Source: Octopus bimaculoides (lineage: Eukaryota). Taken from it: a DNA stretch of 64,000 nt. The notes under the pieces were generated by a model that worked only from the letters and a program-made list of their open reading frames with translations, was not told the DNA's origin and did no database searches. The position numbers were made by a program, and so were the translations under genes. The stretch is from positions 14,201,556-14,265,555 of the forward strand of contig NC_069005.1 of assembly GCF_001194135.2 (NCBI RefSeq). The letters are read 5' to 3'. Each line of letters begins with the position of its first letter. Within the stretch, counting starts at the first letter, position 1. Positions 40,103-64,000 of this stretch are shown here, one piece after another.

Positions 40103-40124
40103 TAACCCATAAAGTTTGTCAGAA

Positions 40125-43100
40125 ATGTCTGCAAACAAAAAGCGTGGTGTCAGTAGCCGTGTCTCAAAGGCTGAGCAAGCACTAAAGAGCAGCAGCGGTA
40201 ATGGCAGACCAGGAAGGTTGGTGGTAGAGTCTGGAGAAGATACTCCCAAGTCAGTTGAGAAATCTTCCTCAAAGTCTAGTGAAAGCATTGGAAATCAAAC
40301 CCCAAAGACCTCTGTGAATGCTGGAAAAGTTGTTCGTAAAGCTGGACGCCCTCGAAAGCATCGGGACGGTGATGGCAGTACACCAGCGACTTCCACAGCC
40401 CTACAGAACCCTGCCACTCTTTCTACCTCTGGTCCGCTGTCATCTGTTGGTGCCAAAAAAAGAGGCCGAAAAGCCAAGAATCCCGAATCTGCAGTTTCCA
40501 CTGGGAGGAAAAAGAGTATTAATAAACGTGCCCTTGAAATTGTGGACACTTCGAAAGCAGCAATGGAGAAGTTACAAAAGAAAAAACCCAAAGGAACAAA
40601 GTTGTTGGCCACAACAAAAAGTAAAAAAATAGGGAAAGTTTACACAGAAAAGGGAATTCTTAGCAAAGTAAAGAAGGTTTGTCCAACAGAAAGCAAAGGC
40701 GCTAACAAGAAAGCTGCCAAAGAACTACAGTCTGTAAATAATAGTAAACTAAAATCTTCAACTTTGCATAAAGTTCTCAAAGGTTCTAAAACAAAGAAAT
40801 TGTTTTCAAACTCTGAAACTGATACCAGTGAAAGCAGCAAAATGCCAAAATCCAAAAAACTAGGGCACAGCAAAGACAATAGCGGGACTGGGCTTAAAAA
40901 GGTTAAGCTAAAAACTTTGATTAAGATGAAAAAATCTGGTAGTCAGCCAGGTAGGAAACGCAAAATACCTCAAGCTGAGTGTGAAGATTCTAAAAAGAAA
41001 ACCAAAGCCAAAAAAATTGTCCAAAGTACTCCGGCCATTATCTCGAAACGGAAGTGCAAAAGTAAAAAAAATGACAATCCAGAAAGTGAGAACAAAGGCC
41101 AGTTGGTGATAAAGAAAAAACCAGGTCCTGTGAAAGGAAGTAAAAAGGCTGTCCCAAAGACTTCTGCACTTGATACTAGTAGTAAAGTACAGAAACTGAA
41201 GAAATCGTTATCGGATAAATTAAAAATTAAGAAATATAAGAAAGTGAAAGATAACCTGTCTCCGCACAGACTTAGTGGCGCTGAAAATGTGGTCCAGCAA
41301 TCCAATAAGTTTGAATCAGCCGATAATAGTAGAATATGTGAAACAAAAGATATTCGCTTCTCAAAGACATCTCCACTTGAGTCAGGTACACCTACAAATG
41401 GAGCAGAAAGTTCTAGAAGACTGGTGAAAACTACACTGGACAGTCATAAATTGAATGTTCAGGGTGTCTATGAAAGTGAAATATCTGATTGTTTCAAACA
41501 AGGAGTTAATGAGGATTCTATCAACAATGTCGTAGAACTGGCTGACATGTCTAACAGTGAAGGAATCAATACTGTCTTGGTGCCGAACAAGACCAAATTC
41601 CTCAACTCTTCGGTGACTGATGTTACGGACAGCGAAGATGTAAATACACAAAGCACAATAGACAGTGAGGATGTCACTACGCGAAGTACTCTCGATAGTG
41701 AAGATGTTAATACACAGAGCACCGTGGAAAGTGATCGAGTGACTACTCCTTGTACAGTTGATAGTGAGGCAGTCAATACTCCAGGTACTGTTGATAGTGA
41801 TCAGGTTAACACACCATATACCATAGATAGTGAAGATGTAAATACTCAGAGTACTGCAGACAGTGAGAGGATCAATACTCCTTGTACAGAAGAAAGTGAA
41901 AACGCCGTTCCTCCTCTTTCTGTTGACAGTGAGGAGGTGAACACCCCTTGCAGTGTCTTCAGTGAACAGGTGAACACCCCTTGCAGTGTCCTCAGTGAAC
42001 AGGTGAATACTTCCTGCAGTGTAGATAGTACAGAGGCTGCAATGCCAAGCTCAATAGAAAGTGAACGGATTAATACACCTTGTTCGATTGATGCTGACGA
42101 TCCCAGCAGTTGTGAACTGGTAGCTTCAGATGTGAAGGCTACTCATGTTGTCAGTTCCCAGAGTCTAGAATACAACACTGTGGAATCTTCGAAAACCCCA
42201 GTTAATCTGAAGGTGGAAGATAATGTGTGTTCGAATCAGATGTTAAGTAGTCTTGAACAGAAGTCACCAGCAGCAAGTGTGGAACCATCAAGTTTACTTG
42301 ATAACCAATCCAAAGAAGTGATAAATACGGGTAGACTGAGTTCACTTCCAAACTCCGAAAGTTCTGAACAAAACCAAGCTGGCTGCCAGTCATTTCCCAA
42401 CCAGTCCAAAGTTGAAACGGATGATGACATTTATACCAAACCAGCAAGCTCTGTGGAAATGAGTCCTTTACTTTTGGAACTTTCCCCTGCTGAAAGTGAG
42501 GTAAACGTAGTTGATGATGTCGAGGTTGTTGATCCCACCAACACATCACCAATTGAACCAGATCTGTCTACAGACAATCAAACAGATCATGGCTCAGATT
42601 TGATTAGCAGTCCAGTTTCACACACGGCAAAAGCTTCCGAGCAGTTGCTGGAAATGCAACATTCTGCAGAAGAAAATCATGGAGATTGTTCTACGTTTTC
42701 AGCACTGAAGGAGAAAAATTGCGATGACTCTTCGGGGTTTACTGTTCAGGCAAAACTTGTGTCTTCAAATCCGTCAGTTGAATTAGCTTCAGATGCCACC
42801 AGTTCTATGCCAGTGTTTTCATCGACTGTTAGCAAAGATCTTCAAACAACAAATGTTGCAGCCGTATCTGTTCCCTCTGCAAAGTCTGAGGATGAAGCTT
42901 ACAGATCTAAATGCTGCACCAATGATGTTGGAAGTCTTGCAGAACCAGTGCAAAAAGACCTTGCTATTGCTACAGAAGATAGAAAAGAATCTGTGACTGA
43001 TGAAGTGTTGGAAAAGTCAGCATGTGTCAATATGCCTGGCTTGGTGTCTGTCATCTCAAGACCTTCCATTATTTCTTCAAGTAAAACAGACATTATTAAA

Positions 43101-46100
43101 CACCAGCAGCAAACTAACTCAGCTAATATACATAATTTACATGAAGATAACAAGAAACCATTTCAACCCCAGTTCCCTGTCAAAGACAAAAATATTTTTG
43201 CCTCGTTTGCTGAACTTGAACCCAAGCTTCACGAAAAGCCTCTGTCTGTAATCCGAGCAACAGCAAATCCAGAAGCTAGTGTTTCAGCTTCACTGGTGAT
43301 GGAGATGTTATCACCACCCTCATCTTCCACCTTCAAACTCTCTAACTGCACTTCTGTATTGAGCAAGATCTCGAAATGTAGCACCGATGTAGACACGTGT
43401 AGTTCTGATGTAAATAAATCAGCCACTAAAATACTGCAGGATATTTCTTCATCTGAAACTGTTCCTACCAAAATTACATCACCACCACCAGAAGCAATTT
43501 CTCATGGCTCTTCATTCTTTGAAAGTAAAATGAATTATGTAAAGGCTACGGAGACGGAGACTTCAGCTTCACTACCCAGAGCTGGTGAGGAATGCAGTAA
43601 AATCACATTGTCACACACTTATTCGAAATTTGTTGAAGATTTGCCTGATCAGAGAAACATGCTGAAAGTTATCCCCCTTGAGCAACCTTCCTCTGGTGGT
43701 GAGCCACAACCTGCTTCACAAGCAACATCATTGTCACTTGGAACTAAACTGTCAGTAAACCAAAAGGATGATCAACCTCCAGCAACTGAATTAGATTCCA
43801 CATCTGATGAACAGAAAGTTGTTGAAAGCAATTTGAATACAAAAATACAATGGCAGCCAAATGCTGTAGCCATGTCTTCTGATGCCAAAGAGTTGGACCC
43901 TAACATAGCTTCTGTGATCAAATGTAGTGACGATGCCAACAAGTCTGATCCAATTAAACTGTTCAAAGAGCAAATCATTAAGAATGTACTTCCTAACGAA
44001 GTATTTCAAATGAAGACTTTACCCAGTAAAGATAATTTGTATTCTCCTTCCAGTATTGTTGCCACTGTTGCATCTAAAATTGACTTGAGTTTGAACACTG
44101 CAGCATGCTCTGCTAGCTTTAAAGATGAACATGGTTTACCCTTGGATACAGCTTCTGTCAAACTTGATCCAGACAAGCCTATGGATAATGACATTTTCAA
44201 AGTTAATTCTGATTTACAAAAAGATACAGTTAATCTTAAAGATGATGCTGATACGCAGTCAGATTCAGCTAGTCCTAAAACAGATCCTTATATGCAATCA
44301 GATGAGGGTAGCCCTCAAGTCAACTCTAATGTGCTATCAAATGAAGATAGCCCCAAAGATGAGCCTGATACAATACTGAATGTAGATGGCTCCAAAGACG
44401 AGCCTGATACTCTATCAAATTTATATGTCCCCCGAAATGAGTCCAACACATTATCAAATGTTGATAGCCCCAAAGATGAACCCAATGCATTATCAAATAT
44501 AGAAAGTACTAGATATGAGCCTGGTGTATTATTAAATGTAGGTCACCCCAAAGTTGAGCTCAATACATTATCAGATCTAAGTATCCCTAAAGATGGACCT
44601 GATACATTGTCAAATGTAGATAGCCCTAAAGATGTACCCAATGCATTATCAAATGAAGATAGCCCCAAAGAAGAGCCTAATACATTAATAAGTATGGGTA
44701 GCCCCAAAGATGAGCCCAATATATTAATGAATATTGATAGCCACAACGTTGAACCTAGTAAATTAATAAATGTGGGTAGCCCCCAAAATGAGCCAGATAC
44801 ATTACCCAATGTAGGTAGTCCCAAAGTTGAACATGACACGTTGATAAATGTCAGTAGCCCCAATGATGAACCCACTACATTATCGAATGTAGATAGCCCC
44901 AAAGTTGAACCTGACATAGTAGTAAATGTCAGTAGCCCCCAAAATGAGAACAATACATTATCAAATATAGGTAACCCCAATGATGAGCTCAATACATCGA
45001 TAAATGTAGGTAGCCCCAATGATGAGCCCAATACAGTAATAAATGCAGGTAGCCCCAAAGGTGAGCCCAATACATTATCAGTTGGTGGAAGCCCTAGAGA
45101 TGAGTCCAATGCATTAATAAATGTTGGAAGCCCTGGAGATGAACCCAGTGCATTATCAATTGTTGGTAGCCCTAGAGACGAGTCCAATGCATTAATAAAT
45201 GTTGGTAGCCCTAGAGACGAGTCCAATGCATTAATAAATGTTGGTAGCCCTAGAGATGAGCCCAATACATTAATAACTGTAAGTAGCCCCAAAGGTGAGC
45301 CTGATAAATTATCAGTTGTTGGTAGCCCTAGAGATGAGTCCAATACATTAGTAAATCTAAGTAGTCCCAAAGATGAGCCCAATACATTATCAATTGTTGG
45401 TAGCCCTAAAGATGAGCCCGATGCATTAATAAGTGTAGGTAGCCCTACAGATGAGCCCAATACATTGTCAGTTGTTGGTAGCCCCAAAGATGGACATGAT
45501 ACATTAATCAATGCAGATAGTCCCAAAGATAAGTCCGATATATTATCAAATATAAATAGCCCCAAAGATGAGCCCAATGCAATATCAAATACAGACAGCC
45601 CCAAAGATAAGTCCAATACATTAATAAATGAAGGTAGTCTTAAAGATGTACCTGATATACAATCAGATACAACATGCCCCGAAATTGACCTCAATATGCA
45701 GTTTGATGTAACTAACTCCCAAGTTGATGCTAATATGCAATCAGATTCTGAATGTTCTATGGATGTGCAGTTGAATGCAACTAATTCCGAAGTTGATCCC
45801 AATTTGCAGTCGGACTCAGCTTGCTCTAGAGTTGAACTTGACATGCAGTTGGAAGTAACTAACCCTGCAGCTAATCCCATTATGCCACTGTCTACAGCAG
45901 AGGATTTGCCAATGGATTCAGCAGTTTCCAAAGCTGATGGTGGCTCTCAGTTGACTATGACTGCTGTTGTTAAAGTCAATTCTGCTACTTATCAAGACAA
46001 ATGCAGTCCTGACGAGAAGTCAGATGTTATTGACAACACAAACACTCCTCCTTCTGCATCTTGTGAGCCATCTTCCCCTGTGGTTGCTTCAGAGAATAAA

Positions 46101-49100
46101 TCTTTTCAGCAGAATCAGTCTCCGGTCGCTGGAGATGAAGCAGAGCAGTTCATCAAAACATCAAAGCCTTCGGATCAATGCCAACCATGTGAAGTGAATG
46201 ATAGTCCTCAGTCCTCTTCATTATTTCCACCTCATCAAACTTCATCATCGTCATCATCAGTATCATCTGTAATACTTCCATCATCATCATCATCATCCTC
46301 ATCCTCCTCCTCATCATCATCATCCTCATCGGCATTGTCATTATCATTGCCATCAACATCATCATCAGAGCTACTGTCTCATGAACAATTACCTAGCTTA
46401 GCTCTATCAGATATGCCTTCTCAAGAACAGAAACTACCATTGGTTATAAGGTTTAATGATTCATCTAATACATGTGATGTGAAAAATGACGAGGAGAAAG
46501 GGAAACCTAGTGTCAAGGCAGAGGTAACCAGTGTGGTGGCAGAGAAGACGTACGTAGAAACGAAGGTCAGTGAAGAAAATGCAGTTAGTTCTGTAGAGTC
46601 TTTAAATGACTCAAACCTAAATGGCATTCCTGACACTATAGGCAATGGCAATGAACCTCCTCCTGGTATCAAGACTTCCAGCCTTGATCCTTCATCAAAT
46701 CTCAGCTGTAGTAGTGATAGTAGTAATAGTAACAGCAAGACGTCTGCTATGGGGACTGTTACTTCATCATCTATGGCCAGTCCATCATTGTCTAAATCTG
46801 ATGAGGCTTCTGTGATACATAGTGAAACCTCCTCCGATAGTGCAGTACCTTCCTATAAAAAGAACCCTGGTGCCTTGATACAAAATCCAACAAACACAAC
46901 AGAATCTTTGGCTGCATTTTCTTTGAATTCTGCCCCAGTTAAAAAGGAGAGTCTTACTGTCCCCACTATCAAGATAAAAGTCGAGTCTGAAGCAACTCCA
47001 TCAGACACTTTGTCCCATTTGTCAACCTCCATGGTGATAGCTCCTGCCGCTGCTCAAAGAATTCTCTCGTTAGCAACTCTGGCCAACAAAGTCACTCTGA
47101 AATCCAGCCATGCCACACCAGCCATTAAGAAATCAAAATCAGTAGATTCTGAAAGTGGCAGTTTGTTACTGAAAGGAGAGGCAGATGGTAACCTGGTGGA
47201 AAGTGAAGATAACAGTGAAAGTGTGGATGAAAGAGTTACCGGTTCAAAGAGCAGTGCTCCAGCTCCCCATAGGGTTGTGAGTGGAGATTTAACCGACCAT
47301 TCGAAGAAGGCTACAGTTGCCATTCCTTCAGATAAAGTTCCTGAAAGAGATGTTTCTGGCTCATCAACATCTACAGAATCTCCAAACATTGAGAAGCCTC
47401 TACTTAGCAAAGATGAGGAAAAACTCTCCAGTGTTGAATTAGGGAAAACCCCTACAGCTACCGACTTGGACAAAGGCTCTGCAGAAAACACTAACAACAG
47501 TTGCCTGAAATCTCCAAACTCCACTTCTAACTCGCAGCTTGTTTGTGATCCTTCTCTGAAAGAGAAGGACAGTGAAGAGCAAAGAAAAGGTTCTAGTTGT
47601 CAGGTTACTGTTGACCTGTCCGTCTCGGTCAGCATCGAGCCCCCTCCTACTCCTTATCCTCCCCTCTCCATATCTCCAAAGGCATCTCATAAGAACATAG
47701 AGATAAACGAGAGAACTGAAATGAGGTCATCCCCCCCTGATGATAAATCCAGCTCCTTAGCTGCAGTTAAAAAGCCAGATGTGGAAATAGTCAAACCACA
47801 GCTGAAGCCATCATTTGCTATCTTTGACAGCTGCCTTGTGTGCATAATTTGCCGGAAGATGTGCAAAAGTAAGAAATCTTTCCAGGCACATGTGTGGTGG
47901 CATTTTCATGCTTGTAGTCGGATGTGCACCCATTGTCTGCCTCCTCCAGAACCCATCAGTATTAATAACCAACACAAACTTCAGCTGAATAAGTGCCCTT
48001 ATGTGATGGATGTTATGGTTAAAATATGTCGCACTCTTAAAAAGATACGTCAGGCAAAGCTGCAGTCTGGCAAAGACCAGGTTGAGCGTGAAAAAACATT
48101 TGCAGAGGAGGAAACTGACACCGAGAGCGTGGATCTAGACTACGACTTGAACAACGGTGGTAGTGGTGGCGGTGGGGAAAACAGTAGCAGCAAGATGGCG
48201 GATCTGTCACTGACCGCAGCACAAGTTGACAGCAGCCAGTCAAACAACCAGAAATCCAATGCAACCGATGACAACAGTATATTTGCTCCAGCAAACGTTG
48301 AGTATCTCAGGTCTCTCTACTCCAGTGGTAGTAACAGCAAAAAACGGACTAAAAAGTCTTCTTCCAGTGGCCCGAACCACCACCACCACCACCACCATCA
48401 CCACCACCACCACCATAGTTCGTCCTCGTCGTCTTCTTCGTCCACCTCCTCATCTGTGGTAAACTCTTCAGTGTCGTCTTCCCACAAGAAAGGGGGTTTC
48501 TATGTCTGCGGTTTTCAGTACTGTACTTACTCCTGTATGAATTGTCTTCAGTTCCGTCTGCATCTACAGCAGTGTCATAACTTTGAAACTGTGTTTCCTT
48601 GCTACCATTGTGGCCAGCTGAACTATTCAAAAGATGACCTCATCAAACACATGTACAATCATTCAAATGCGCGAGATTTTCTGCTATTTCGATGTTGGTT
48701 CCCTCGGTGTCGATTTGGTACAAACATGCTTCAGGAGTTTCACGAACACAACAACATCTTCCATGTCGGTGAGTTAGTGTTTACCTGCTTCTATTGCAAT
48801 ACGGAGTTCCCCGAACTATCTGAACTGCTCAACCATCTCCAGTCTAATTTGCTGAAATTTGTACAATGTCCTCACTGCACTGTGAAGGACCGAAACCGAA
48901 GGACTGTTTTGAACCACATATCTACCGAACACCCACTGAAACCAAAGCAAATTGTGGTCACCTGCCAAGTTGTATGCAAAAAGAAGCAAACTGTCTCCCC
49001 TGATGCTAGTGAGATACTGCACAATCAGCATCTTAAACTAAACCAGTCTCTGTCCGAAGAACGAATACTGGAATGTATTAAATGTGGCCTGATCTGTCGT

Positions 49101-51424
49101 AACATAGCAACATTACGGAAACACTCCCGCGTCTGCCTCCGAGACGCTCTTTCTAAGAAAACATTCAGCTCACCAAGAGAGAACAATTTAACTATGATCT
49201 ACTCTTGTCAATGGTGTAGTTTCCCAGCAGCCTCTGATACAATGCTTTTCCAGCACACTGTTGACCAGCATCCGGGCAAGAATGCCAATTTTGAGCAGAT
49301 TGAGCTGAAGGCACTTGACTCAGGATATGGTGAATATGAAAACCTCTCTAGAATGTCGTCTTGGCTCGAAACAACCAAGAGCGAAGCTATCATCTGCCCT
49401 TACTGCAAAGTTGGCTTTGATGATGAACTCCAGTGGAGTGAACACATGGAGCATGAACACAACCACGAAGAGCATATAGTCAAAGAAGAAGATGATGATG
49501 ATGACGACGATGAGGATGGCCATTTATCAAAGTACCGATGTGATTTTTGTGAATTTAACGGTATTTCTGAAAAGGATCTCTTAGATCACCAGCAAATGAT
49601 GACTATATCCGAGGGTCCTGACGGGCTGCATAGAAGGGTTGTTGACCTCGCAAATGTAACACCAAAAGTGACAATGTTAACGGACACCAAGTTAACTGTG
49701 AGTAACGTTCAGTCATTCAAGAAGTTCAAGAGGTCACCAAGTAAAAAGATGAACAATGCATTCTTTAAGTGTTCTGGCTGCCACTTCCGGAGCTTGAGCA
49801 AGTGGCAATCATTGCGACACGTGAAGCATTGTTCCCTTGCAAAGCGACGCCTCTCAGAATATATGAAGAAAAGAGGGTCATTCGTAAGCCGAGATGAAGT
49901 GAAGGCAGATATGGACATATACAATTTCCCAGAAAGCAACTCTGGATCATCGTCTTCGTCGTCTGAGCGACTGAGTTTCACTGCCGCCAGTAGTGATGAG
50001 CTACGCAATCAAAAGAGTTCTCGAATGATGTCATACATGCGGGACAAACAGATGAACCTGATGGCCAAGGAAGGTATTATCGACTGCACAGACAGCGAGG
50101 GATACAAGTGTTCAATTTGTAAACATACTGGCAAAACAATGATAAACATTCGGCAGCATCTGTGGAAGACTCATCTGAAACTAAAACCCGTTCGTTGTCC
50201 TTGCTGTCCATTCACGTCCTGGAAGAACTACACCCTGGAAAAGCACAAGATCAGCAAGCATCATCATTCGCATCCCAACCTCTCTGATCAAGAGATGAAA
50301 TCGCTGGCTCAGAATCTCCAAGGAACCACTGATGGTCTCGTTGAATGTCAGCTCTGTTTCTACAAGAGCCCCAGTCCATATAAAGTACGAACACACCTCT
50401 GGCGAACGCACATGCACCTTGAAATGAAACAGTGTAGGTCCTGCTCTTATAAGTGTTGGTATTGGTACTTAATGAACATGCATCGACTGTCACGACACAA
50501 AATAAAGGTAGACCAGAATAGCACGAAATATCAGCAGCAGCAACAGCAGAAGAGTCAAAACGAAAACAAAAATATGCTCGAAGGTAATGGTGAATCCAAA
50601 ACCAATGACAAAAATTCGTGTAAATCAAATGATGGTGACAATGCTGTAATGTCTGACGAAGACATGAGTCAACTAGCTAAAGAGTTGATGGAGCGAAAGA
50701 CTGATAATAAATACGAATGCACTATATGTAAATATGAATGCACACGCATTATGATAATGAAAATTCATATCTGGAAGCGCCATTTGAATGTAAAACAACG
50801 CAAATGCCAATATTGTCCGTACACTTGCTGGCTAGAAACGCGTTTGGCTCAACATGTATGTCGGATTGTAGTAGCCAGTTCTTGTGATGTTAACTCCGAT
50901 GGTGGCGGCGGTGGTGATGGTGGTGCCACAGGGCCAATACAGGACTCCAAATCTCGGTGGGTGATTTCAAAAGCAGATGAACATGGTTGCAAGTTATACA
51001 TTAATAAATCAAAGCGTCCACACAAAAGACTATCGTTTGAAGAGTTCGGAAGGCCGTGTCCAAAGAAATTCCGATCACTTTCCGAAGGCGGGGCTGCCAA
51101 TGGGAGTGCTGATAACAGTGTTGATGGCTTAGATGACTCTGAGAATACCTCGAGTTTTACTGCCACCTCAACTGTGGCAACTTTTGTCAAGGGAAGTAAG
51201 AACTTTTCTTGGATCCGACAGAAGCATGAGAAGTCTGTTTCTCAATCTTTCTTCCGCGTTAATGACAAAAAACTTTTTGCACGCACCACAGACCGTTTGA
51301 ACCAGTTGGAAATTTATACGTGTGTTTTCTGTAGCTATAAGTCCTGGAATATGGAGGCAATGTGTCACCATACTTACAAACATAAGCTACAGTGTGGTTA
51401 CTGCTTGTTCAGAGCCTACAGCCG
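40125..51424 (+). CDS. Giant coding exon of a very large multi-zinc-finger nuclear protein (AT-hook/Lys-rich N-terminus, two tandem peptide-repeat arrays, poly-Ser, poly-His, ~19 C2H2/C2HC fingers); continues into a downstream exon
   Basis: Stop-free frame of ~11.3 kb. First ATG at 40125 (MSANKKR), just after a possible acceptor TTTGTCAG (AG 40121-40122). Ends at consensus donor CG|GTAAGT (GT 51425-51426, phase 2) in the middle of a finger (LQCGYCLFRAYSR). Many C-x2/4-C-x12-H-x3/4-H/C motifs between 47841 and 51424. Confidence 0.93.
41628..42089 (+). repeat. Coding tandem repeat, 14 x 33 bp (11 aa, consensus DSE[D/Q]VNTP[C/S][T/S]V)
   Basis: Units read from the translation: DSEDVNTQSTI, DSEDVTTRSTL, DSEDVNTQSTV, ESDRVTTPCTV ... 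ESERINTPCSI; the span is exactly 14x33 nt. Confidence 0.92.
44271..45635 (+). repeat. Coding tandem repeat, 35 x 39 bp (13 aa, consensus SP[K/R]DEPN[T/A]L[S/I]NVG), with more diverged units continuing to ~45870
   Basis: Units from SPKTDPYMQSDEG to SPKDKSNTLINEG keep exact 13-aa register; SPRDESNALINVG occurs three times identically at the protein level. Confidence 0.95.
46241..46367 (+). repeat. Coding (TCA/TCC)n poly-serine tract
   Basis: TSSSSSSVSSVILPSSSSSSSSSSSSSSSSSALSLSLPSTSSS in frame. Confidence 0.9.
48378..48416 (+). repeat. Coding (CAC/CAT)13 poly-histidine tract flanked by poly-Ser
   Basis: 13 consecutive His codons in frame. Confidence 0.95.
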
Positions 51425-54400
51425 GTAAGTAAAACGTTTTAGCTTGTTTTAATTTAATCAATACATCTCTCACTTTCTCTCTCTAATTTTGCACAGCAAT
51501 CTAGTTATACGCTTTAGTTACTGAACCTTACCTTTGACAGCTATATGTTGTTTTCAAACATTTATGCACATATGTTTAACCCATTAGCATTCAGATTATT
51601 TTGTCAAATATGTTTATTCACATTGTTTTGAATTAATCATGCAATTATCTTGTAGCTTTGACTGTTTGATGGTGTGATTGTTTATTTTTTGAATGTAGCA
51701 TTGATGCAAGAGGCAGGATCTGGCCAGTTTGAACAGAAAAAAAACTGGTAGAATATTCTAGATATAGCTGGTTTTAAATTCTCTAACCCTTTGGCATTTG
51801 TATTATTTTGTCAAAAGTAATTCTTATTTATTCACATTGTTTTGAATTAATCATGCATTATCTTGTAACTTTGAGATTTTGATGAGGTAACTGTTTAGAA
51901 TGACATTGTTGGGTTAGTGTGAGAAGCCAGATCTGGCCAGTTTGAACATAAGAGGCAGAATATTTGGGCTGGGTATGGCCAGTTTAAATGCTAAAAGGTA
52001 GTTCAAAGAAATGACCATTACTATATTCTCTTGACCATTTGTCATGTTCTCCTTAAATTAGTGCAATAAATGAATCGATTGCTTGGCTTATGATAAATGG
52101 TCCCAATTGTGTTTAGTTGAAGGAGAAATGGGAATTGTGGGCACACATGCCTATCCCAGAGGCATTAGCAATATAAGTGAAATAATTTTCACTGTGATGA
52201 GAAACAAGATGGTACTCATTTTTACTAGCAGATGATGTCCTGTACAGCACATAAGCAAGCTACTATTAACTTGTTTGGATGAAGAGAAGCTAAGCCATCG
52301 ACTTTTACGGCTCAACTGGGGTCCATATAAGATTTTGTTGTTAAAATTTATACGTAGTAAATTAATTGTACTTCTACAATAAACAAAATATTTTCACAAT
52401 TCTTTTATGCAATTCCTAATAATATTTAATCATAAAAATATAGTGGGATTTTCTAGACATTGAATAATTATGAGGGATTCCACTCTACTTCCTGAGTGAA
52501 ATCGGAATCAAAGAAGCCAAAAATAGTTAAGAACTACTGCTTTAACCCTTTAGCATTCGGAGTATTCTGTCACATGTAATGCTTTTTCATTCACGTTGTG
52601 TTTAAGTAATCATGCTTTATCTCATAGCTTTGAAATTTTGATGATGTGATTGTATATTTTTAGAGTAGCATTGAAAGGTAAGTGTGATAAGCTGCATCTG
52701 ACTGGTTAGAACATAAAACAGGAAACCTATTTGGGCCAGATGTGGCTCAGGTTAAATAAATGTGGGTCGGGTGGGAATATAGAAGCTGTAAAAGAAACTT
52801 GTTGAAGCGGCAGCACATCTTGTTGGGTATTTGTTGAAACATGTGAGTGAAATGTTGCCAATTTGATGATATTGATTGAGTCTGGTTTCTATCAGCCTGT
52901 TTGATACCAGCCCATTTGAAACTGCCTCTAAGTTCTGTGATAAACACTTTCTGTTTTAATGTGATCTCAAACCTTTCATCAAAGTTTCATATTTATGTTC
53001 CAAACATCAACTTAGTAATGACAAGAATTTTCAAAATTAATTGTAATAGTGAAGCCAGTGCAAGTCAATAGAAATATGATAACTAGTGCCAAAAAATATC
53101 TTTACTAACATTAGCAAAACCAGTGGGTTTTCTATGCTATTCCTTGTGTAAACCCAATTTACAGTTTAGAAATAACTAACATTAATTGTATGGCTTTTAA
53201 ACATCTTGTTGTCTCCCTTTATGCGCTGAGTTTCTTTCAGTGATGTGTTTCCTTGGGCCACCAGACACTGATGTATGGCTTCAGTACTGTTTAACTGATC
53301 TAAGATGAATCTATTCCTGGATAGGATACCAGCCTATAGCAAGTAACATCCTCAGACAAACTTGTAGCAATTCCTGACGGCTATAAGGTCTATAGAATTC
53401 TTGTGCTATGTTCAGAAACACAACTAAGTTTTTGTATCTATTATGATTTGTCTTACACCTAGTCACTTGACCAATGTGTTTACACAACCCTTAAATAACA
53501 ATTTCTTTAACCAAACATGAAATAGGGTTAGATTGACCACACAGTAGAACTAAAACTCACAGTCCAGGAACAAATCATCTTGTATTTTATTCATCCATTT
53601 TCCTCTTTCACATTGTCATCATTGTCATTTGACATCCACTCTTCCATGCTTGCACAGGTCAGAGTTTCTTTTTTTTCTTCTTCTTTGAGACAGCTTTTCT
53701 ATGGCCAGATGCTCTTCCTGTTGCTAACCTCACCTGTTCCCAAACCTGATAATATTTCCTCGTGGAAGACTGGAAACAAACATCACCAGTTGTTTGTTGG
53801 TGATACACTTTTACGATCATAAAATGATGTCACGGCAAGATCATACACACACACACATACATAATGAGCTTCTTCCAGATTCCATCAACTAGATGCATTC
53901 ACAAGGACATGGGACCCTGACAGGTGCTACTAATCTGCATCAGAGTAGACCTGGGAAAAATAGTGGCTAAGAAACAGACCCACATACCTCAAAACCTTAG
54001 AACTTCTGACACCAGTGCCCCACTACCAGATGCAGTTTAAAACCATACCCAATAGACTTAATTGTTAATGCTAAGTGACTAGTGAGTTATGGTTGTAGAA
54101 GTGAAATAGCACAAATGGAATAATGGCTACTTTGAGGTGCAATTAGAAGCATGGTCATCTTGCAAGTGATGGATATGGAATTCAAATTCTCTCAATGGTT
54201 CTGTTCTTTTTTTGTCTCTAGTTTGTAATTTATAATATCTGAGAAAAGACTTCTCTGTACCCTGTCAACATCAAGTACTGCATCCATTTCATTCTTAATA
54301 TCCCAGTTTGTATGGTTGTAAGTAGATACCAGAGAGTAAATTCATTCAACTCTACAGCTTGTGAGTGACATAAACAACCGTTTTATTAGTTTTAGGTTCT

Positions 54401-54548
54401 GGGTATAGGTTCTCTTGTAGCCCTGATCCATGAATAGATTGTGCTCCACAATGGAATCATATTTCAGTATAGATATCATGGAATATGGTACCATTTATGT
54501 GTGTGTGTGTGTGTGTGTGTACACACCTGTGCTTATTCCTCTATTATA

Positions 54549-55835
54549 TTAGGTTGTCAAGAAAGTTCTTGCAGTTTTTAACTTTCAAATTCAGATCCAC
54601 ATATCTTGGCTCAAACAAAGCTTTATTAATTGAAATAAACACCATCAGGATCAACCCACTTTTGCCAACACGAAACAAGTTTATTTACGCCAGTCGCATA
54701 AAGATCTTGCATTCTGGTGGCGATGAAGTCATTGAAAGCGTGTTTGGCATCGTCTTAGTTTTTGAAGCATTTCTCATGCAGGAAGTTGTCGAGATGCTTG
54801 AAAAAGTGGTAGTCAGTAGGCAAGAGGTCTGGTGAGTATGGCGGATGAGGCAGAGTTTCGTAGCCCAATTCATTCAACTTCTGCAGGGTCAGTTGTGCGA
54901 TATGCAACCGAGCGTTGTCGTGGAGAAGAATTGGTCCTTTTCTATTGACTAATGCTGGCTGTTGTCGGATTTTCCTATGCATTTCATCCATTTGCTGACA
55001 GTACTTCGCCATAGTGGTTTCGCCTGGATCCAAAAAGCTTTGATGGATGAGACCGGCCGCAGACCACCAAACAGTTGCCATTACCTTCTTTTGGAGCAAC
55101 TTTGGCTTCGGGAAGTGCCGTGGGGCTTCATCAGTGTCCAACCACTGAGCTGAGTGTCGCCAGTTGTCGTAAAGAATCCACTTTTCATCGCAAGTCACAA
55201 TCCGGTCAAGAAACGGGTTGTTCTTGTTGTGTAAAAGAAGGGAAGACGACACTNNNNNNNNNNNNNNNNNNNNNNNNNNNNNNNNNNNNNNNNNNCGTGT
55301 GGCACCCATTTCTCAAGTATTTTTGTTTATCCAATCTCTTTCAAGTGGTTCGAAATTATCGTGTACATTACGTTTAATTCAGAAGCAAGCTCTTGAACAG
55401 TTGTGCGTGGATTGGCTTCCACTAAGGCTCGTAGTTGATTGTTGTCAACATCTGATGGCCGACCACTACCCTTATCATTTTCAAGACTCTTGTCACCGCT
55501 ACGGAATTTCTTGAACCACCATTGTGCTGTTCGTTCATTAGTGGTTCCTGGGCCAAATGCATTGTTGATATCACAAGCTGTTTCAGCAGCTTTTTGGCCT
55601 AGCTTGAACTGGAATAAAAAAATTGTGTAAATTTGCTTTTTGTCCATGTTGTATTCAACGTTCCTGAAAAAATGGCCTAATTACTCAAAAAGAAAAAGAG
55701 TAACACGATTAGGTAGAGCGAAAAACGGCTTTAAAATGATATATACAGTCAAAGTAATTTAGTGAAAATTAATTTGAAAATACATCATTTAAAACCAAAA
55801 TTAAAAATTCTGCAAGAACTTTCTTGACAACCTCA
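54549..55835 (-). mobile_element. Full-length but defective mariner (DD34D, Hsmar1/cecropia-like) DNA transposon
   Basis: TIRs TTAGGTTGTCAAGAAAGTTCTTGCAG (54549) and CTGCAAGAACTTTCTTGACAACCTCA (ends 55835), TA on both sides, ~1.29 kb long including a gap. Confidence 0.95.
54626..55647 (-). pseudogene. Mariner transposase pseudogene
   Basis: MDKKQIYTIFLFQFK...WVPH...TCDEKW...HDNAR...[13 protein letters not shown]...VYFN-stop. In-frame nonsense codons at 55327-55329 and 54755-54757, small in-frame deletions, and a 42-N gap. Confidence 0.92.
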
Positions 55836-56342
55836 TACTTTATCCTTCAACACCTGGCATAAAACTCTCTCTATCTCTCTCTAATCAAATCCCACTCTGT
55901 CAAGAAGACTTTCTTTGTCTTGTCTTTACTTTGTGCTGCAATTTATTATACCTCACCAGTGCCAGTGTCGTGAAAAATGCACCCAGTACACAGTGTAAAG
56001 CAGTTGGTTTTAAGAAGGGTATCAAGCTATAGAAACCATGCCAAAGCTGACATTGAGGCCTGACTCAGCTCTGCAGCTCATTAAATCCCATCATACAATC
56101 CAAAATATCACAAACAGACATTAAACAATTATCATGATGATGATGTATAATAAAAACCTGAGTCTTAGACAACTAGTGTTGATCTGCAGAGTCAGCAAAT
56201 AACCATTTAGTGAAGTTTGAAATTTTGGGAGTGTCACAGGAGAAGAGAATAGTGACATTTTAAGTTAAACCCTTGGTGGGAGAGTTTTGAATAAAACACC
56301 TGACGTTTCATCTCACCCACAACATACATATTTTACAGTATA

Positions 56343-56580
56343 CAGTAAATCCATTGCCATATCACAGTTCACCTATTGCGGTTTATTATTTTAGCTTATA
56401 TCGATTCCTCCATGGTATTGTTTTGCATTTATAATAAAATAAATATATACAATTATAAAAATATAGAATACTGATAAAAAAAAATTATGCAGTACAATAC
56501 CGTTTCTACTTCACAGATTTTCACCTATCTCTGGGAGGGGGTATTGAAACATAACACCCGTGATATTCGAAGGATTACTG
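56343..56580. mobile_element. Tigger/pogo-like MITE
   Basis: TA|CAGTAAATCC ... CGAAGGATTACTG|TA. Confidence 0.5.
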
Positions 56581-57374
56581 TACTCCACAGTTGTTAATCT
56601 GCTGAAATAACATGTAATTGTAGCAGTAAAAGCACAACCAACTCATCAGGCAGTATATTGTGTGGCCATGACATTATCATTGCACTGTATATACAGGTTT
56701 CCTGATCACTTGATAGCTACTGTATAAAAGCCAACACCGAGGTAGACACAATTGAGTTCTACAATTGGCATATAAGCAAATGCTTCTGAGTATTTTATCA
56801 ATTGTGATAAGCCCTTCGTATTTGTTGGCTCAGCAATTCTGGAGACTATATCTTGAAGTAATTCCCAGTAACTGAACAGTTTCTGAGGATTCCACAAGAT
56901 AAAAGAGATCTTAGATAAAATTTGATAAAAATTTATTTTACGTAATAAAAAAAGAATAAATAAATAAATAGAAGTTATTCTCCCATTTCAACATAACGTT
57001 TTACTTGTTTCAGTCCCTGGAGTATTGTCATATTGGAGCACTAACTTAGGAGTTTAGTCGATCAAATCGGCCCCAGTACTTTAAAAAAAAAAAATTTTAA
57101 GTGCATTATTTATTCTATTGGCTCATAAGCCAATCTGCTAAGTTACAAAGACATAAACAAACCTACACCGGTTAAGAAACAGATATGTACACACTATGTA
57201 TGTATGTATCTATCTGTGACGAGGTTTTATTTATTTATTTTTTTTTGTTACGTTCTCTTTTCAAAATAATTTCATTTAATCTCACTCTCTCATGAAAATT
57301 AATTATCCATTAAATAAAGACATGAGTTCCAGAACGGCTGGCCACACACATACGAAGTTATTTATCTCAAAGTG

Positions 57375-57751
57375 TTTACTCTTTACTCTTTTACTTGTTT
57401 CAGTCATTTGACTGCGGCCATGCTGGAGCACCGCCTTTAGTCGAGCAAATCAACCCCAGGACTTATTCTTTGGAAGCCTAGTATTTATTCTATCGGTTCT
57501 TTTTGCCGAACCGCTAAGTTACGGCGACGTAAACACACCACCATCGGTTGTCAAGCGATGGTGGGGGGACAAACATATACATATATACGACGGGCTTCTT
57601 TCAGTTTCCGTCTACCAAATCCACTCACAAGGTTTTGGTCGGCCCGAGGCTATAGTAGAAGACACTTGCCCAAGGTGCCATGCAATGGGACTGAACCCGG
57701 AACCGTGTGGTTGGTAAGCGAGCTACTTACCACACAGCCACTCCTGCGCCT
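57375..57751 (-). mobile_element. Young tRNA-derived SINE of a second family (head AGGCGCAGGAGTGGCTGTGTGGTAAG, CORE-like CCTTGGGCAAGTGTCTT, tail GAAACAAGTAAAAGAGTAAA)
   Basis: Complete copy with A/B-box-like head on the minus strand and CpGs retained. Confidence 0.85.
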
Positions 57752-58619
57752 TGTTTGTTGACTTTTTTTTACTACTATACATATTCATCTGATAAGAGAG
57801 AAGAAGGCATTTTGACTTTGAACTCTTGATTTTCCATAATTCGATTCGCCAAAAATAAACAGTCTTTTACGTCTAGACACCCTATGGGAAAGAAAATATA
57901 ATTTTAAGTAACGGAGAAAAAGAAATCTGTAGAAATACAGTCGGTTAGATGGTTCCAGGGAGATAACTCTGTAGCTTCTAACTTACTTTAATTAGCTTAG
58001 AAATGTGATGACGGATTCTGGTGCATTCTATAGTTTAAATTTGATAGCTTTGGATGTTATTTAAATGGCTAGTATGGTTCTTCCACGGAGTAATTACTTC
58101 AGTTTCAACACATTGTCCCAGGTCAAATCACTTGCCAGACAAGTACAACTCCGAAATTAGGAAATGTATTTCTGATCATTCGAGATACTTCGAAGTCATT
58201 TTTCATGACGCCTTCTCCAAAAGTGTGCTTTCGTCAATAACTAAAACTAGCGATATTGAAAGAATGTGGCGTTAACTTGTGAAACGACAATTAACTAATG
58301 CAGTTGTGGTTACGTAGGCGGAGTGTGCATATTAAATGTTGCCTTTCATATTATTTCTGATTGCACTCGGCAATGTTTATTCCCACAACCGAAACAAACG
58401 TGTTTTTAAGACAATCGTCCTCGATACGTCCCTCGACTGCCCTTACAACCAAAATCCATTACCCCCAAGTAGTATAACAATAATGAATTGCCATCGGCCA
58501 GTTTAAAAAAGCATTTATTAATCAAATAGGGCGAATATCTTGACAAGGGAAGCAACTCTTGGTTGGTTTGTAGATTACCCCCCCTCTCTCTGATTTATTA
58601 CTGTATGTACTACATATAC

Positions 58620-58810
58620 TCTTTTACTTGTTTTAGTCATTAGACTGCGGCCATGCTGGAGCACCGCCTTTAGTCGAGCAAATCGACCCCCAGGACTTAT
58701 TCTTTGTAAGCCTAGTACTTATTCTATCGGTTCTTTGGCCGAACCGCCAAGTTACGGGGATGTAAACACACCACCATCTGTTCTCAAGCGATGTTGGTGG
58801 GACAAACACA

Positions 58811-58858
<48 letters not shown>

Positions 58859-59117
58859 CGACGGGCTTCTTTCAGTTTACGTCTACCCAATCCGCTCACA
58901 AGGTTTTGGTCGCTCCGAGGCTAGAGTAGAAGACACTTGCCCGAGGTGCTACGCAGTGGGACTGAANNNNNNNNNNTTAGTCGAGCAAATCGACCCCCAG
59001 GACTTATTCTTTGTAAGCCTAGTACTTATTCTATCGGTTCTTTGGCCGAACCGCCAAGTTACGGGGATGTAAACACACCACCATCTGTTCTCAAGCGATG
59101 TTGGTGGGACAAACACA

Positions 59118-59165
<48 letters not shown>

Positions 59166-59331
59166 CGACGGGCTTCTTTCAGTTTACGTCTACCCAATCC
59201 GCTCACAAGGTTTTGGTCGCTCCGAGGCTAGAGTAGAAGACACTTGCCCGAGGTGCTACGCAGTGGGACTGAACCCGGAACCAAGTGGTTGGTAAGCGAG
59301 CTACTTACCCACACAGCCACTCCTGCGCCTA
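58620..59331 (-). mobile_element. Second-family SINE, one copy represented twice across a 10-N gap
   Basis: 58670-58966 and 58977-59273 are identical 297-bp stretches; the head is completed at 59331. Confidence 0.85.
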
Positions 59332-59612
59332 TATGTTCATGACCCTTTCTCCCACTCGCTTCCTCCAAAGATGTACTTTTGTGAATTACTAAAACTAGAT
59401 TGGAAGAATGTAAAGTTAACTTGTGAAACGAGGATTAATTAACGCAGTTGTGGTTACGTAGGCGGAGTGTGCATATTAAATGTTGCCTCCCACAGAACAT
59501 TCGTATAATTATTTGTAAAGGCAAGTGGCTTTGTGGTTAACGTGATTGCACTAATAATGTTTATTCCCTCCCGCCCCAACTGAAGCAAACAGGTGTTTTT
59601 GAAGCAATCCTC

Positions 59613-60876: not shown

Positions 60877-60914
<38 letters not shown>

Positions 60915-63983: not shown

Positions 63984-64000
63984 GTATTTCCTTCATTGGG

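What the first reader, a model, noticed from the sequence alone, without database searches (positions are those of the whole stretch)
44271..45635. 35-unit, 13-aa Ser-Pro repeat array: candidate phospho-switch or ruler domain, still homogenising
Seen: exact 39-bp periodicity with 28 of 35 units beginning Ser-Pro (mostly SPK/SPR followed by acidic DE). Central units are most alike (SPRDESNALINVG three times), while both flanks grade into a diverged MQSD-type unit (SPKTDPYMQSDEG before; CPEIDLNMQFDVT, NSEVDPNLQSDSA after), the pattern expected from central expansion by unequal crossover. Established: S/T-P is the target of proline-directed kinases (CDK, MAPK, DYRK) and Pin1, and repeat-borne multisite phosphorylation controls the RNA Pol II CTD, Ki-67 and MDC1. 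Inference: a multisite charge switch in a DNA-binding protein. I do not recognise this repeat unit.
Basis: partly seen in the sequence, partly recalled or inferred. Interest (0 to 1): 0.8.

Follow-up and report, generated by a model that had tools for sequence, protein, structure and literature searches.

The report
Coding Ser-Pro repeat in zinc-finger gene
The 35-unit, 13-amino-acid Ser-Pro repeat is real and lies inside an 11.3-kb coding exon of a giant ZNF462-like zinc-finger protein of a mollusc, where it most likely forms an acidic, disordered stretch of repeated docking or phosphorylation motifs; this is an ordinary kind of feature with an unrecognised unit sequence.

Summary
There are 35 in-frame 39-bp units at 44271-45635 with no indels, and 28 of 35 start with Ser-Pro. 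One degenerate unit lies before the array and three after it, all in register.

The array sits in a single exon (ATG 40125 to splice donor 51425) that encodes about 3,770 aa. That product has a basic N-terminus with AT-hook-like motifs, about 2,000 aa of acidic, Ser-rich low-complexity sequence, and then at least 15 C2H2 fingers. The fingers give near-threshold matches to ZNF462-specific Pfam models.

Constraint within the repeat unit is not limited to Ser-Pro. Five positions are anchored: S1, P2, E5, L9 and N11. pN/pS is about 0.16 at the Ser-Pro codons and about 0.79 elsewhere. In the older 5' half, Ser-Pro is no better kept than E5, L9 or N11.

No unit carries a full CDK or MAPK consensus. 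Most units are about 70% identical to each other, so the array is old. Only a patch at about 45090-45480 looks recently duplicated.

No Pfam family and no orthologue of the array turned up among 1.84 billion representative proteins. One distant ZNF462-like protein has its own 13-aa array with a similar P-x-D-E-x-N core but no Ser, and it sits at a non-collinear position.

Phosphorylation is plausible but untested. I rate this a new member of a known kind, of modest interest.

The parts
40125..51424 (+). Giant coding exon (about 11.3 kb, about 3,767 codons) of a ZNF462-like zinc-finger gene. It contains the array.
   Evidence: The ORF at 40116..51428 is the only long open frame in the region. 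The ATG is at 40125, after an in-frame stop at 40110-40112. A canonical donor, CG|GTAAGT, begins at 51425. The splice to 63899 restores the codon CGG and continues the match to orthologue P0001. The 5' end is uncertain because an N-gap at 39503-40054 lies just upstream.
40335..40970 (+). Three AT-hook-like basic motifs (RKAGRPRKH 40335-40361, KKRGRKAK 40455-40478, PGRKRKIP 40947-40970) within a basic N-terminal region with net charge +72 over 470 aa.
   Evidence: Regex and charge counts. The motif assignment is by eye and was not tested against a profile.
41628..42089 (+). A second in-frame array in the same exon: 14 units of 33 bp (11 aa), consensus DSEDVNTPCxV.
   Evidence: TRF rows at 41627-42022 with periods 33 and 66. 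Units are listed.
44232..44270 (+). Degenerate 5' flanking unit (NLKDDADTQSDSA), in register with the array.
   Evidence: 59% identical to the core consensus. Its best match (74%) is the 3' flanking unit at 45636.
44271..45635 (+). Core array: 35 units of 39 bp (13 aa), consensus SPKDEPNTLSNVG, net charge -48.
45090..45479 (+). The youngest and most homogeneous patch of the array. SPR/LINV-type units alternate with SPK/LS[IV]V-type units, and it includes the identical pair at 45168 and 45207.
   Evidence: Best-partner identities here are 0.82-1.00. The 3' half of the array has mean lag-1 identity 0.76 against 0.66 in the 5' half. Even lags exceed odd lags (P about 0.007).
45636..45752 (+). Three degenerate 3' flanking units (SLKDVPDIQSDTT, CPEIDLNMQFDVT, NSQVDANMQSDSE). 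Further relics that have slipped out of register continue to about 45890.
44543..45931 (-). Antisense ORF of 462 aa. It is a by-product of the repeat unit lacking stops in one reverse frame, not a gene.
   Evidence: Listed. Across the array, - frame 2 has 3 stops, whereas + frame 1 has none and is continuous with 11.3 kb of ORF.
47832..51424 (+). C2H2 zinc-finger region: at least 15 finger-like motifs in this exon.
   Evidence: Regex matches. Pfam PF23225 scores 26.5 bits (cut-off 27) and PF23075 scores 20.3 bits. PF23223 scores 17.7 bits on the spliced C-terminal end. PDB sequence matches are to generic C2H2 proteins such as CTCF and TFIIIA.
51425..63898 (+). Intron of about 12.5 kb, carrying a mariner (Mos1-type) transposase remnant on the minus strand.
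   Evidence: Donor and acceptor sites. Pfam HTH_48 and Transposase_1 hits.
63899..64000 (+). Start of the next coding exon (…R KKIADHIDEFHQAPLKIVVDKNFKKYQMVFPSL). The gene runs off the end of the window.
   Evidence: tblastn of P0001 residues 955-994. The spliced translation has no stop codon.

Best explanation
The array is an in-frame coding minisatellite inside the giant exon of a ZNF462-like chromatin zinc-finger gene.

Origin: it grew by unequal exchange or slippage from an older 'x-P-x-V-D-x-N-M-Q-S-D' unit, relics of which survive at both edges. Most duplications are ancient. A patch of about 10 units towards the 3' side has duplicated recently in blocks of two and six units.

Product: about 455-510 residues that are acidic (net charge -48), punctuated by proline and probably intrinsically disordered. 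This stretch sits in the roughly 2,000-aa linker between a basic N-terminus with AT-hook-like motifs and the C-terminal finger region.

Proposed function: selection maintains a repeated short linear motif, S-P-x-[DN]-E-x-[ND]-x-L-x-N-psi. The array therefore most likely acts as a multivalent module in which each unit offers the same small docking site. The Ser-Pro serine is a probable phosphorylation site that raises the negative charge (from about -48 to about -100 if all sites were filled) and tunes partner or intramolecular binding.

Shown here: the repeat, its frame, the gene context, the position-specific constraint and the age structure.

Inferred: disorder, multivalent docking and phosphorylation.
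For: Repeat and frame: period 39, 0 indels, 35 units, and only + frame 1 is open.

Gene context: the array is embedded in an 11.3-kb ORF with a canonical donor and acceptor. The downstream exon matches the mRNA-derived orthologue P0001.

Host protein: several C2H2 fingers match ZNF462-specific Pfam models. Homologues pass the curated cut-offs: P0001 with PF23223 at 28.5 bits against 27, and P0002 with PF23225 at 29.1 bits against 27.

Constraint by position: consensus residues are kept at S1 in 30, P2 in 32, L9 in 29, E5 in 28 and N11 in 25 of 35 units. pN/pS is 0.17 (S1), 0.12 (P2), 0.11 (E5) and 0.24 (L9), against 0.5-3.4 at positions 6-8, 10, 12 and 13. Ser-Pro compared with the rest gives Fisher P = 1e-4. 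The Pro codon varies freely at its third base (CCC 22, CCT 13) but hardly at bases 1 and 2 (33 and 34 of 35).

Composition: 12% Pro, net charge -48, and the disordered side of the charge-hydropathy boundary. AlphaFold2 on the single sequence gives mean pLDDT 40 and pTM 0.33.

Age structure: edge units are 0.59-0.64 identical to the consensus and interior units 0.72-0.92. There is one perfectly identical adjacent pair, and the 3' half is more homogeneous.
Against: - There is no expression or phosphorylation data. No orthologous array was found to test conservation between species.
- The units are not independent samples. The 13 CCT Pro codons may derive from a few events inherited by a sub-family, so the Fisher P is overstated.
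- Overall pN/pS is 0.66, and mean conservation is flat across codon positions (0.79, 0.80, 0.81). Much of the unit therefore evolves nearly neutrally.
- No unit has the optimal CDK or MAPK consensus.
- A low pLDDT from a single sequence is only weak evidence for disorder.
- The older flanking units mostly lack Ser-Pro. Its prevalence could therefore partly be a founder effect of the unit that was amplified.
Confidence: 0.5

Rival explanations
1. Tolerated, functionless expansion. The array is a coding minisatellite drifting in a disordered linker. The only selection is against frameshifts and stop codons, because the fingers lie downstream, and perhaps for general solubility.
For: Overall pN/pS is 0.66 and conservation is equal at the three codon positions. 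Positions 8, 10 and 13 have pN/pS above 2. No homologue of the unit was found anywhere. A second, unrelated 11-aa array lies in the same linker, and a distant relative has other arrays, which suggests the linker simply tolerates repeats.
Against: Five positions show few replacements despite plentiful synonymous change. There is no in-frame indel in 1,365 bp at about 30% divergence, although the older relic units downstream have slipped register.
Confidence: 0.25
2. Multisite charge switch driven specifically by CDK, MAPK or DYRK-type proline-directed kinases. This is the first reader's reading, by analogy with the RNA polymerase II CTD, Ki-67 and MDC1.
For: 28 Ser-Pro sites at a fixed 13-residue spacing, all 16 units of the 3' half included. 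The Ser-Pro codons are under purifying selection. 13 sites have S/T-x-x-x-S-P spacing, which would allow GSK3-type priming (consensus from my own knowledge). The 11-aa array also carries T-P in 8 of its 14 units.
Against: There are 0 [ST]-P-x-[KR] sites and 0 P-x-[ST]-P sites. No Arg lies at -2 or -3, as DYRK would prefer (units listed; consensus from my own knowledge). Ser-Pro is no better conserved than E5, L9 or N11 in the older half, and a pure charge switch does not explain that. Outside the array, Ser-Pro is not enriched: 24 observed against 26.5 expected.
Confidence: 0.2
3. Array of phospho-enhanced SUMO-interacting motifs. The L-[IV]-x-V and L-S-[IV]-V cores, followed by G-S-P-[KR]-D-E, would bind poly-SUMO or multi-SUMOylated chromatin proteins.
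For: A generic four-residue core with at least three V/I/L occurs in 15 units, including 10 consecutive ones (units 22-31). Composition shuffles give 5.5 +/- 1.8. A review defines the SUMO-interacting motif as such a core plus flanking acidic or phosphorylatable residues that forms a beta-strand on binding (PMC12751080). AlphaFold2 places one short strand per unit, although at low confidence.
Against: The motif is loose and gives many false positives (PMC12751080). With stricter ELM-style patterns written from memory, only 7 matches remain. Half of the units have L-S-N-V, with only two hydrophobic residues. A basic K or R and a Pro interrupt the would-be acidic flank. The similar array in P0006 has no hydrophobic core.
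Confidence: 0.1
4. Folded beta-rich rod (a solenoid-like 'ruler'), with one strand per 13-aa unit and two units per turn.
For: The AlphaFold2 model has a 5-6-residue strand in nearly every unit. L9, N11, a hydrophobic residue at position 12 and G13 are conserved. There is a weak two-unit (26-aa) periodicity.
Against: Mean pLDDT is 40, pTM is 0.33 and no residue exceeds 70. Only 22% of residues are hydrophobic and the composition lies on the disordered side. AlphaFold2 often builds spurious beta structures for repeats (my own knowledge).
Confidence: 0.05
5. Not part of the protein: either an intron or exitron removed from the mRNA, or an assembly artefact.
For: There is no transcript evidence for this part of the exon. 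The assembly is a gapped draft.
Against: Among the six frames only this one is stop-free across the array, and it continues the 11.3-kb ORF on both sides. Units are about 30% diverged, so they are not a collapsed or duplicated read artefact. Third-base variation at conserved codons indicates translation.
Confidence: 0.03

Closest known systems
Vertebrate ZNF462 / mouse ZFP462 (host protein family)
   Same: Both are very large proteins with many C2H2 fingers scattered along them. ZFP462 has 27 fingers (bioRxiv 10.1101/2021.06.28.449463). Finger-specific Pfam models for ZNF462 (PF23225, PF23075, PF23223) match this protein and its homologues.
   Different: The window's own scores all fall just under the curated cut-offs, the best being 26.5 against 27. 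I found no description of a tandem-repeat array or AT-hook-like N-terminus in ZNF462. The paper describes ZNF462 as conserved in vertebrates, and recruitment of G9a/GLP and HP1 is known only for the mouse protein.
13-aa array of P0006 (locus L003, ENA ERZ21939214 contig ctg10827l), a distant ZNF462-like protein of an unidentified animal
   Same: Same protein family: BLASTP E = 2e-23 over the finger cluster. Same 39-bp / 13-aa period. The unit KPQDECNASTDVH aligns with SPRDESNALINVG at 6 of 13 positions (P, D, E, N, A, V). It was the fourth-best hit among 1.84 billion representative proteins.
   Different: It has no Ser before the Pro and no L-x-N-V hydrophobic patch. It has 12 nearly identical units (96% matches), so it is young. 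It lies downstream of the homologous finger cluster, whereas the array here lies upstream. A match of 5 of 13 or better at the best rotation has chance P of about 0.02, and every strong hit in that search was a 13-aa-period protein. Common descent is therefore unproven.
Neurofilament H/M KSP repeat side-arm domain (from my own knowledge)
   Same: Dozens of tandem short units each carry S-P next to K and E in an acidic, disordered region. Multisite proline-directed phosphorylation changes its charge and extension.
   Different: The units there are 6-8 aa with K before the Ser (K-S-P). Here the units are 13 aa with G, D or S before the Ser and a conserved E…L…N tail. That is a cytoskeletal protein and this is a zinc-finger protein. 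No sequence similarity was detected.
RNA polymerase II CTD heptads, MDC1 PST repeats and Ki-67 repeats
   Same: Tandem repeats bearing S/T-P that act as multisite phospho-platforms in nuclear proteins.
   Different: The unit lengths differ (7, 41 and about 122 aa) and the sequences are unrelated. Those arrays are conserved across wide taxa, whereas no orthologue of this one could be found.
Histone H1/H2B SPKK DNA-binding motif (from my own knowledge)
   Same: Both begin S-P-K/R and occur in chromatin-associated proteins.
   Different: SPKK needs two basic residues. Here position 4 is D, V, N or G, and there are 0 matches to S-P-[KR]-[KR]. The unit is net acidic.

Membership tests
ZNF462-like zinc-finger proteins (host gene) | ZNF462-specific finger models (Pfam PF23223, PF23224, PF23225, PF23075) reach their gathering score. 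| tested here: inconclusive
   Window protein: PF23225 26.5 bits against a cut-off of 27, PF23075 20.3 against 27, and PF23223 17.7 against 27 on the spliced end. Orthologue P0001 passes PF23223 (28.5 bits) and the bivalve homologue P0002 passes PF23225 (29.1 bits).
ZNF462-like zinc-finger proteins (host gene) | A very large protein with many C2H2 fingers dispersed along it. | tested here: met
   At least 3,800 aa encoded within the window. There are 17 finger-like regex matches, of which at least 15 are plausible fingers, between residues 2573 and 3763, with more in downstream exons of the orthologue.
ZNF462-like zinc-finger proteins (host gene) | Recruits G9a/GLP and HP1 to silence chromatin. 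| not testable with these tools
   Known only for mouse ZFP462 (bioRxiv 10.1101/2021.06.28.449463).
Proline-directed multisite phospho-repeat (CTD / neurofilament KSP type) | Tandem units each carrying S/T-P. | tested here: met
   28 of 35 units overall, and 16 of 16 in the 3' half.
Proline-directed multisite phospho-repeat (CTD / neurofilament KSP type) | The S-P positions are under stronger constraint than the rest of the unit. | tested here: inconclusive
   pN/pS is 0.16 at the Ser-Pro codons against 0.79 elsewhere, P = 1e-4. However, E5, L9 and N11 are equally conserved in the older half, and the units are not independent.
Proline-directed multisite phospho-repeat (CTD / neurofilament KSP type) | The sites match a kinase's extended consensus: CDK [ST]-P-x-[KR] or MAPK P-x-[ST]-P. 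| tested here: not met
   0 and 0 matches. Only the minimal S-P is present, with K or R at +2 in 21 units.
Proline-directed multisite phospho-repeat (CTD / neurofilament KSP type) | Phosphorylation observed on the repeat. | not testable with these tools
SUMO-interacting motif array | A four-residue core with at least three V/I/L. | tested here: inconclusive
   Present in 15 of 35 units, against 5.5 +/- 1.8 in shuffles. Only 7 matches remain with stricter ELM-style patterns written from memory.
SUMO-interacting motif array | An adjacent acidic or phosphorylatable stretch. | tested here: inconclusive
   The core is followed by G-S-P-[KR]-D-E. This provides Ser, Asp and Glu but is interrupted by Pro and a basic residue (definition from PMC12751080).
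SPKK minor-groove-binding motif | S-P-[KR]-[KR]. | tested here: not met
   0 matches in the array.
Any curated protein repeat or domain family (Pfam-A) | A significant profile match over the array. | tested here: not met
   There is no hit over the array. The only row is a chance-level HTH_PafC match with E = 0.17.
Folded beta-solenoid repeat | A confidently predicted regular fold. | tested here: not met
   Mean pLDDT 40.4, pTM 0.33, and no residue at or above 70.

The most novel reading that the evidence does not exclude
The 13-aa 'P-x-D-E-x-N-[AT]…V' repeat may be an ancient module of invertebrate ZNF462-like proteins that is amplified again and again. It is shared between this mollusc and the distant animal behind P0006. 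In this reading it is a multivalent docking motif for a conserved chromatin partner, possibly SUMO or a reader enhanced by phosphorylation. The cephalopod lineage would then have added a Ser-Pro phospho-switch and a hydrophobic L-x-N-V patch.
Probability: 0.12. Interest if true: 0.55.

Novelty: new member of a known kind. Interest (0 to 1): 0.3.

Why it matters
Coding tandem repeats in disordered linkers of chromatin regulators are a quick route to changing how many copies of a binding site a protein offers and how it is regulated by phosphorylation. This array is a clean case. There are 35 units, so each position has 35 internal replicates to show which residues selection keeps (S1, P2, E5, L9, N11), and every unit yields a near-identical tryptic 13-mer, so mass spectrometry could test phosphorylation directly.

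If the motif proves to be a real docking site, it would give a first functional handle on the uncharacterised invertebrate relatives of ZNF462, a human neurodevelopmental disease gene. If it does not, this remains a typical lineage-specific coding minisatellite.

Tried and rejected
- The whole-protein homology search timed out.
- The word-index search with the array plus flanks found nothing.
- The profile search with a finger-cluster alignment returned one unrelated finger fragment.
- Two JGI metagenome scans found nothing.
- Exact look-ups of window-encoded ORFs, made to identify the species, found nothing. The Octopus origin is therefore unverified. The nearest named relative is the bivalve Tegillarca granosa.
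- The 42 weak hits of the exhaustive HMMER search are, apart from P0006, unrelated proteins that merely share a 13-aa period. P0027 is a BTB-finger protein with different fingers. P0009's unit GPGKEPNSLIIII matches at 5 of 13 positions, but it sits in an ORF that looks like translated non-coding DNA.
- I first counted the Tegillarca 30-bp x 42 array as a third coding array. I rejected this because no frame is open for more than about 127 aa.
- A pseudo-alignment of shifted array windows, intended to deepen the AlphaFold input, was abandoned. MAFFT aligned the overlaps as a staircase, so it carried no information.
- CtBP PxDLS, SPKK, sumoylation psi-K-x-E and PDSM motifs gave 0 matches, and HP1 PxVxL gave 2.
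- PDB sequence matches to the finger region are generic C2H2 proteins plus His-tag artefacts.
- I first placed the splice donor after 51425. The correct reading is CG|GTAAGT, with the codon completed by G63899.
Full report
**Observation.** Tandem Repeats Finder reports a single array at 44335-45648 with period 39, 33.7 copies, 71% matches, no indels and score 921. Cutting the sequence into 39-bp units from 44271 gives 35 in-frame 13-aa units. Of these, 28 begin Ser-Pro, and the consensus is SPKDEPNTLSNVG. SPRDESNALINVG occurs three times, and the copies at 45168 and 45207 are identical in DNA. One degenerate unit lies upstream (44232) and three lie downstream (45636-45752), all in the same register. 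Further relics downstream have slipped out of register. Only + frame 1 is free of stops across the array. The description is accurate.

**Context.** The array lies in one ORF, 40116..51428, of 3,770 codons. The first ATG is at 40125, just after an in-frame stop and 70 bp after an assembly gap, so the true 5' end is uncertain. The ORF does not end at its stop codon. A canonical donor, CG|GTAAGT, begins at 51425. A polypyrimidine-AG acceptor ends at 63898, and G63899 completes the split CGG codon. The spliced reading continues without a stop. It matches residues 955-994 of P0001, a 71%-identical protein from a Logan contig assembled from sequencing run ERR12374249. The intron holds a mariner Mos1-type transposase remnant. 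The gene runs off the end of the window.

**Host protein.**
- Residues 1-470 are basic (net +72) and contain three AT-hook-like motifs.
- Residues 471-2560 are acidic and Ser-rich. They contain a separate 14-unit, 11-aa array (DSEDVNTPCxV, 41628-42089), the 13-aa array, a poly-Ser run and a poly-His run.
- From residue 2573 there are at least 15 C2H2 fingers.
- Pfam gives only ZNF462-specific finger models. PF23225 scores 26.5 bits against a cut-off of 27, PF23075 scores 20.3, and PF23223 scores 17.7 on the spliced end.
- Homologues pass the cut-offs: P0001 and P0048 with PF23223 at 28.5 and 28.9 bits, and the bivalve Tegillarca granosa protein P0002 with PF23225 at 29.1 bits.

I therefore call the gene ZNF462-like, with membership borderline for the window's protein taken alone. 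Mouse ZFP462 has 27 dispersed fingers and recruits G9a/GLP and HP1 (bioRxiv 10.1101/2021.06.28.449463). Nothing is known about invertebrate relatives. I could not verify the species. The closest named relative is a bivalve, so a mollusc is consistent.

**Anatomy of the unit.** Conservation of the consensus residue is highest at P2 (32/35), S1 (30), L9 (29), E5 (28) and N11 (25). I counted differences from the consensus codon as synonymous or not. This gives pN/pS of 0.17 (S1), 0.12 (P2), 0.11 (E5) and 0.24 (L9). Positions 4, 6, 7 and 12 give about 0.5-0.7, and positions 8, 10 and 13 give more than 2. Ser-Pro against the rest is 0.16 against 0.79, Fisher P = 1e-4. The Pro codon shows the classic pattern, with bases 1 and 2 nearly invariant (33 and 34 of 35) and base 3 split C 22 / T 13.

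Two cautions apply. First, units share ancestry, so the counts are not independent events and the P value is too optimistic. Second, averaged over the unit the three codon positions are equally conserved (0.79, 0.80, 0.81) and overall pN/pS is 0.66, so most of the unit is only weakly constrained.

Split by halves, the older 5' half keeps S1 in 14 of 19 units and P2 in 16 of 19. That is no better than E5 (15), L9 (15) or N11 (16). The 3' half keeps Ser-Pro in 16 of 16 units. What is maintained is therefore a five-anchor motif, S-P-x-x-E-x-x-x-L-x-N, rather than a bare Ser-Pro.

**Age and turnover.**
- Mean DNA identity between units is about 0.70 at all lags.
- Edge units are 0.59-0.64 identical to the consensus and interior units 0.72-0.92.
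- The 3' half is more homogeneous, with lag-1 identity 0.76 against 0.66 in the 5' half.
- Only one adjacent pair is identical.
- Even lags are slightly more similar than odd lags (block-permutation P about 0.007). This reflects alternating SPR…LINV and SPK…LS[IV]V units.
- Best partners at offsets of 2 and 6 units suggest block duplications.

The pattern fits growth by unequal exchange, with the edges escaping. However, the array is mostly old, and 'still homogenising' applies to roughly 45090-45480 only.

**Motif tests.**
- There is no [ST]-P-x-[KR] (CDK) site and no P-x-[ST]-P (MAPK) site.
- 21 units have S-P-[KR].
- 13 sites have S/T-x-x-x-S-P spacing, and 4 have S-S-P.
- S-P-x-[DE] occurs 20 times. 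From my own knowledge, however, Pro at +1 disfavours CK2.
- SPKK, CtBP PxDLS, psi-K-x-E and PDSM motifs give 0 matches.
- A generic SUMO-interacting core (at least three V/I/L in four residues) occurs in 15 units, 10 of them consecutive, against 5.5 +/- 1.8 in shuffles. It is followed by G-S-P-[KR]-D-E.
- This fits the loose definition of a parallel SUMO-interacting motif with an acidic or phosphorylatable flank (PMC12751080). Stricter patterns written from memory keep only 7 matches, so I treat it as a low-probability lead.

**Structure.** The array has 12% Pro, 22% hydrophobic residues and net charge -48. It lies on the disordered side of the charge-hydropathy line. AlphaFold2 without an alignment gives mean pLDDT 40 and pTM 0.33, with one short strand per unit and no residue above 70. 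This gives no support for a fold, though it is only weak evidence for disorder.

**Relatives.**
- Pfam has nothing for the array.
- The word-index search found nothing.
- The exhaustive HMMER search of 1.84 billion representatives found 42 weak hits, all confined to the array, and nearly all are unrelated proteins with a 13-aa period.
- The exception is P0006, a 2,029-aa single-ORF product on a 338-kb ENA contig (locus L003).
- P0006 is homologous in its finger cluster (E = 2e-23). It carries in-frame arrays of 42 bp x 27 and 39 bp x 12, and the next ORF carries one of 102 bp x 4.5.
- Its 13-aa unit KPQDECNASTDVH aligns with SPRDESNALINVG at six positions.
- A 5-of-13 match at the best rotation has chance P of about 0.02. 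That array lies downstream of the homologous finger cluster, whereas the one here lies upstream, and it lacks both the Ser and the hydrophobic patch.

I therefore consider common descent possible but unproven, at roughly one in four.

The 30-bp x 42 array at the Tegillarca locus is not an open frame, so it is not evidence of a coding repeat. The 10 kb upstream of the Tegillarca gene has no 39-bp array. That favours a lineage-specific origin for the array here.

**Mechanism.** The best-supported reading is a coding minisatellite that builds a long, acidic, Pro-punctuated and probably disordered segment. This segment presents about 30 copies of one short linear motif, between a basic DNA-binding-type N-terminus and the finger region. 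The Ser-Pro serine is the obvious candidate for regulation by phosphorylation, which would roughly double the negative charge. Multivalent docking and phosphorylation are inferences.

The rivals, in order, are:
1. Neutral tolerated expansion.
2. A specific CDK/MAPK charge switch.
3. An array of SUMO-interacting motifs.
4. A folded beta rod.
5. Non-coding sequence or assembly artefact.

**Novelty and verdict.** The unit sequence is an orphan, but the kind of feature is well known: an S-P-bearing tandem repeat in the disordered region of a nuclear protein. I rate it a new member of a known kind, with interest about 0.3. Its interpretation is partly supported.

Noticed in passing
window 41628-42089 (+): A second, unrelated in-frame tandem array lies in the same exon: 14 units of 33 bp (11 aa), consensus DSEDVNTPCxV. 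It has T-P in 8 units and a conserved D-S-E start.
   Followed up: partly
window 46242-46367 and 48376-48416 (+): A poly-Ser run ((TCA)n, about 41 codons) and a run of 13 His codons lie in the same exon. The His run produced spurious His-tag matches in the PDB search.
   Followed up: no
window 54755-55647 (-): A mariner (Mos1-type) transposase remnant lies in the intron, with Pfam HTH_48 and Transposase_1 hits. It is interrupted by an N-gap at 55254-55295.
   Followed up: yes
window 14754-15353 (+), also 11275-11643 (-): A reverse-transcriptase fragment lies upstream of the gene (Pfam RVT_1, E = 1.8e-18). The second ORF, which I guessed might be retrotransposon-derived, had no Pfam hit.
   Followed up: partly
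window 6561-6650 and 59955-60043: Short interstitial telomere-like arrays of CCCTAA/TAACCC type.
   Followed up: no
window 58670-59273: A 307-bp unit is repeated exactly twice at 100% identity, and an N-run (58967-58976) lies at about the junction. This looks like a scaffolding or gap-closing duplication rather than biology.
   Followed up: no
window, 13 N-runs (for example 39503-40054, directly upstream of the ATG at 40125): This is a draft assembly, and its gaps are mostly flanked by (TA)n, (TC)n or (TG)n microsatellites. The gap before the exon hides the promoter or upstream splice site.
   Followed up: partly
L003 12649-13778, 14325-14803, 19185-19705: A distant ZNF462-like gene on ENA contig ERZ21939214:ctg10827l carries three different in-frame arrays: 14 aa x 27, 13 aa x 12 and 34 aa x 4.5. 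Tandem arrays therefore seem to arise repeatedly in the linkers of this family.
   Followed up: partly
L002 24999-26264 (Tegillarca granosa CM056607.1): A 30-bp x 42 array is partly annotated as the C-terminus of the 'LOW QUALITY PROTEIN' P0002, but it is not open in any frame beyond about 127 aa. The neighbouring 728-aa gene model (7682-9981) looks like the N-terminal part of the same gene, so the gene model appears to be split.
   Followed up: partly
window 44543-45931 (-): A 462-aa antisense ORF runs across the array (repeating LGLPTFINVLGSS). It is a by-product of the repeat unit, and gene finders could mis-call it as a gene.
   Followed up: yes
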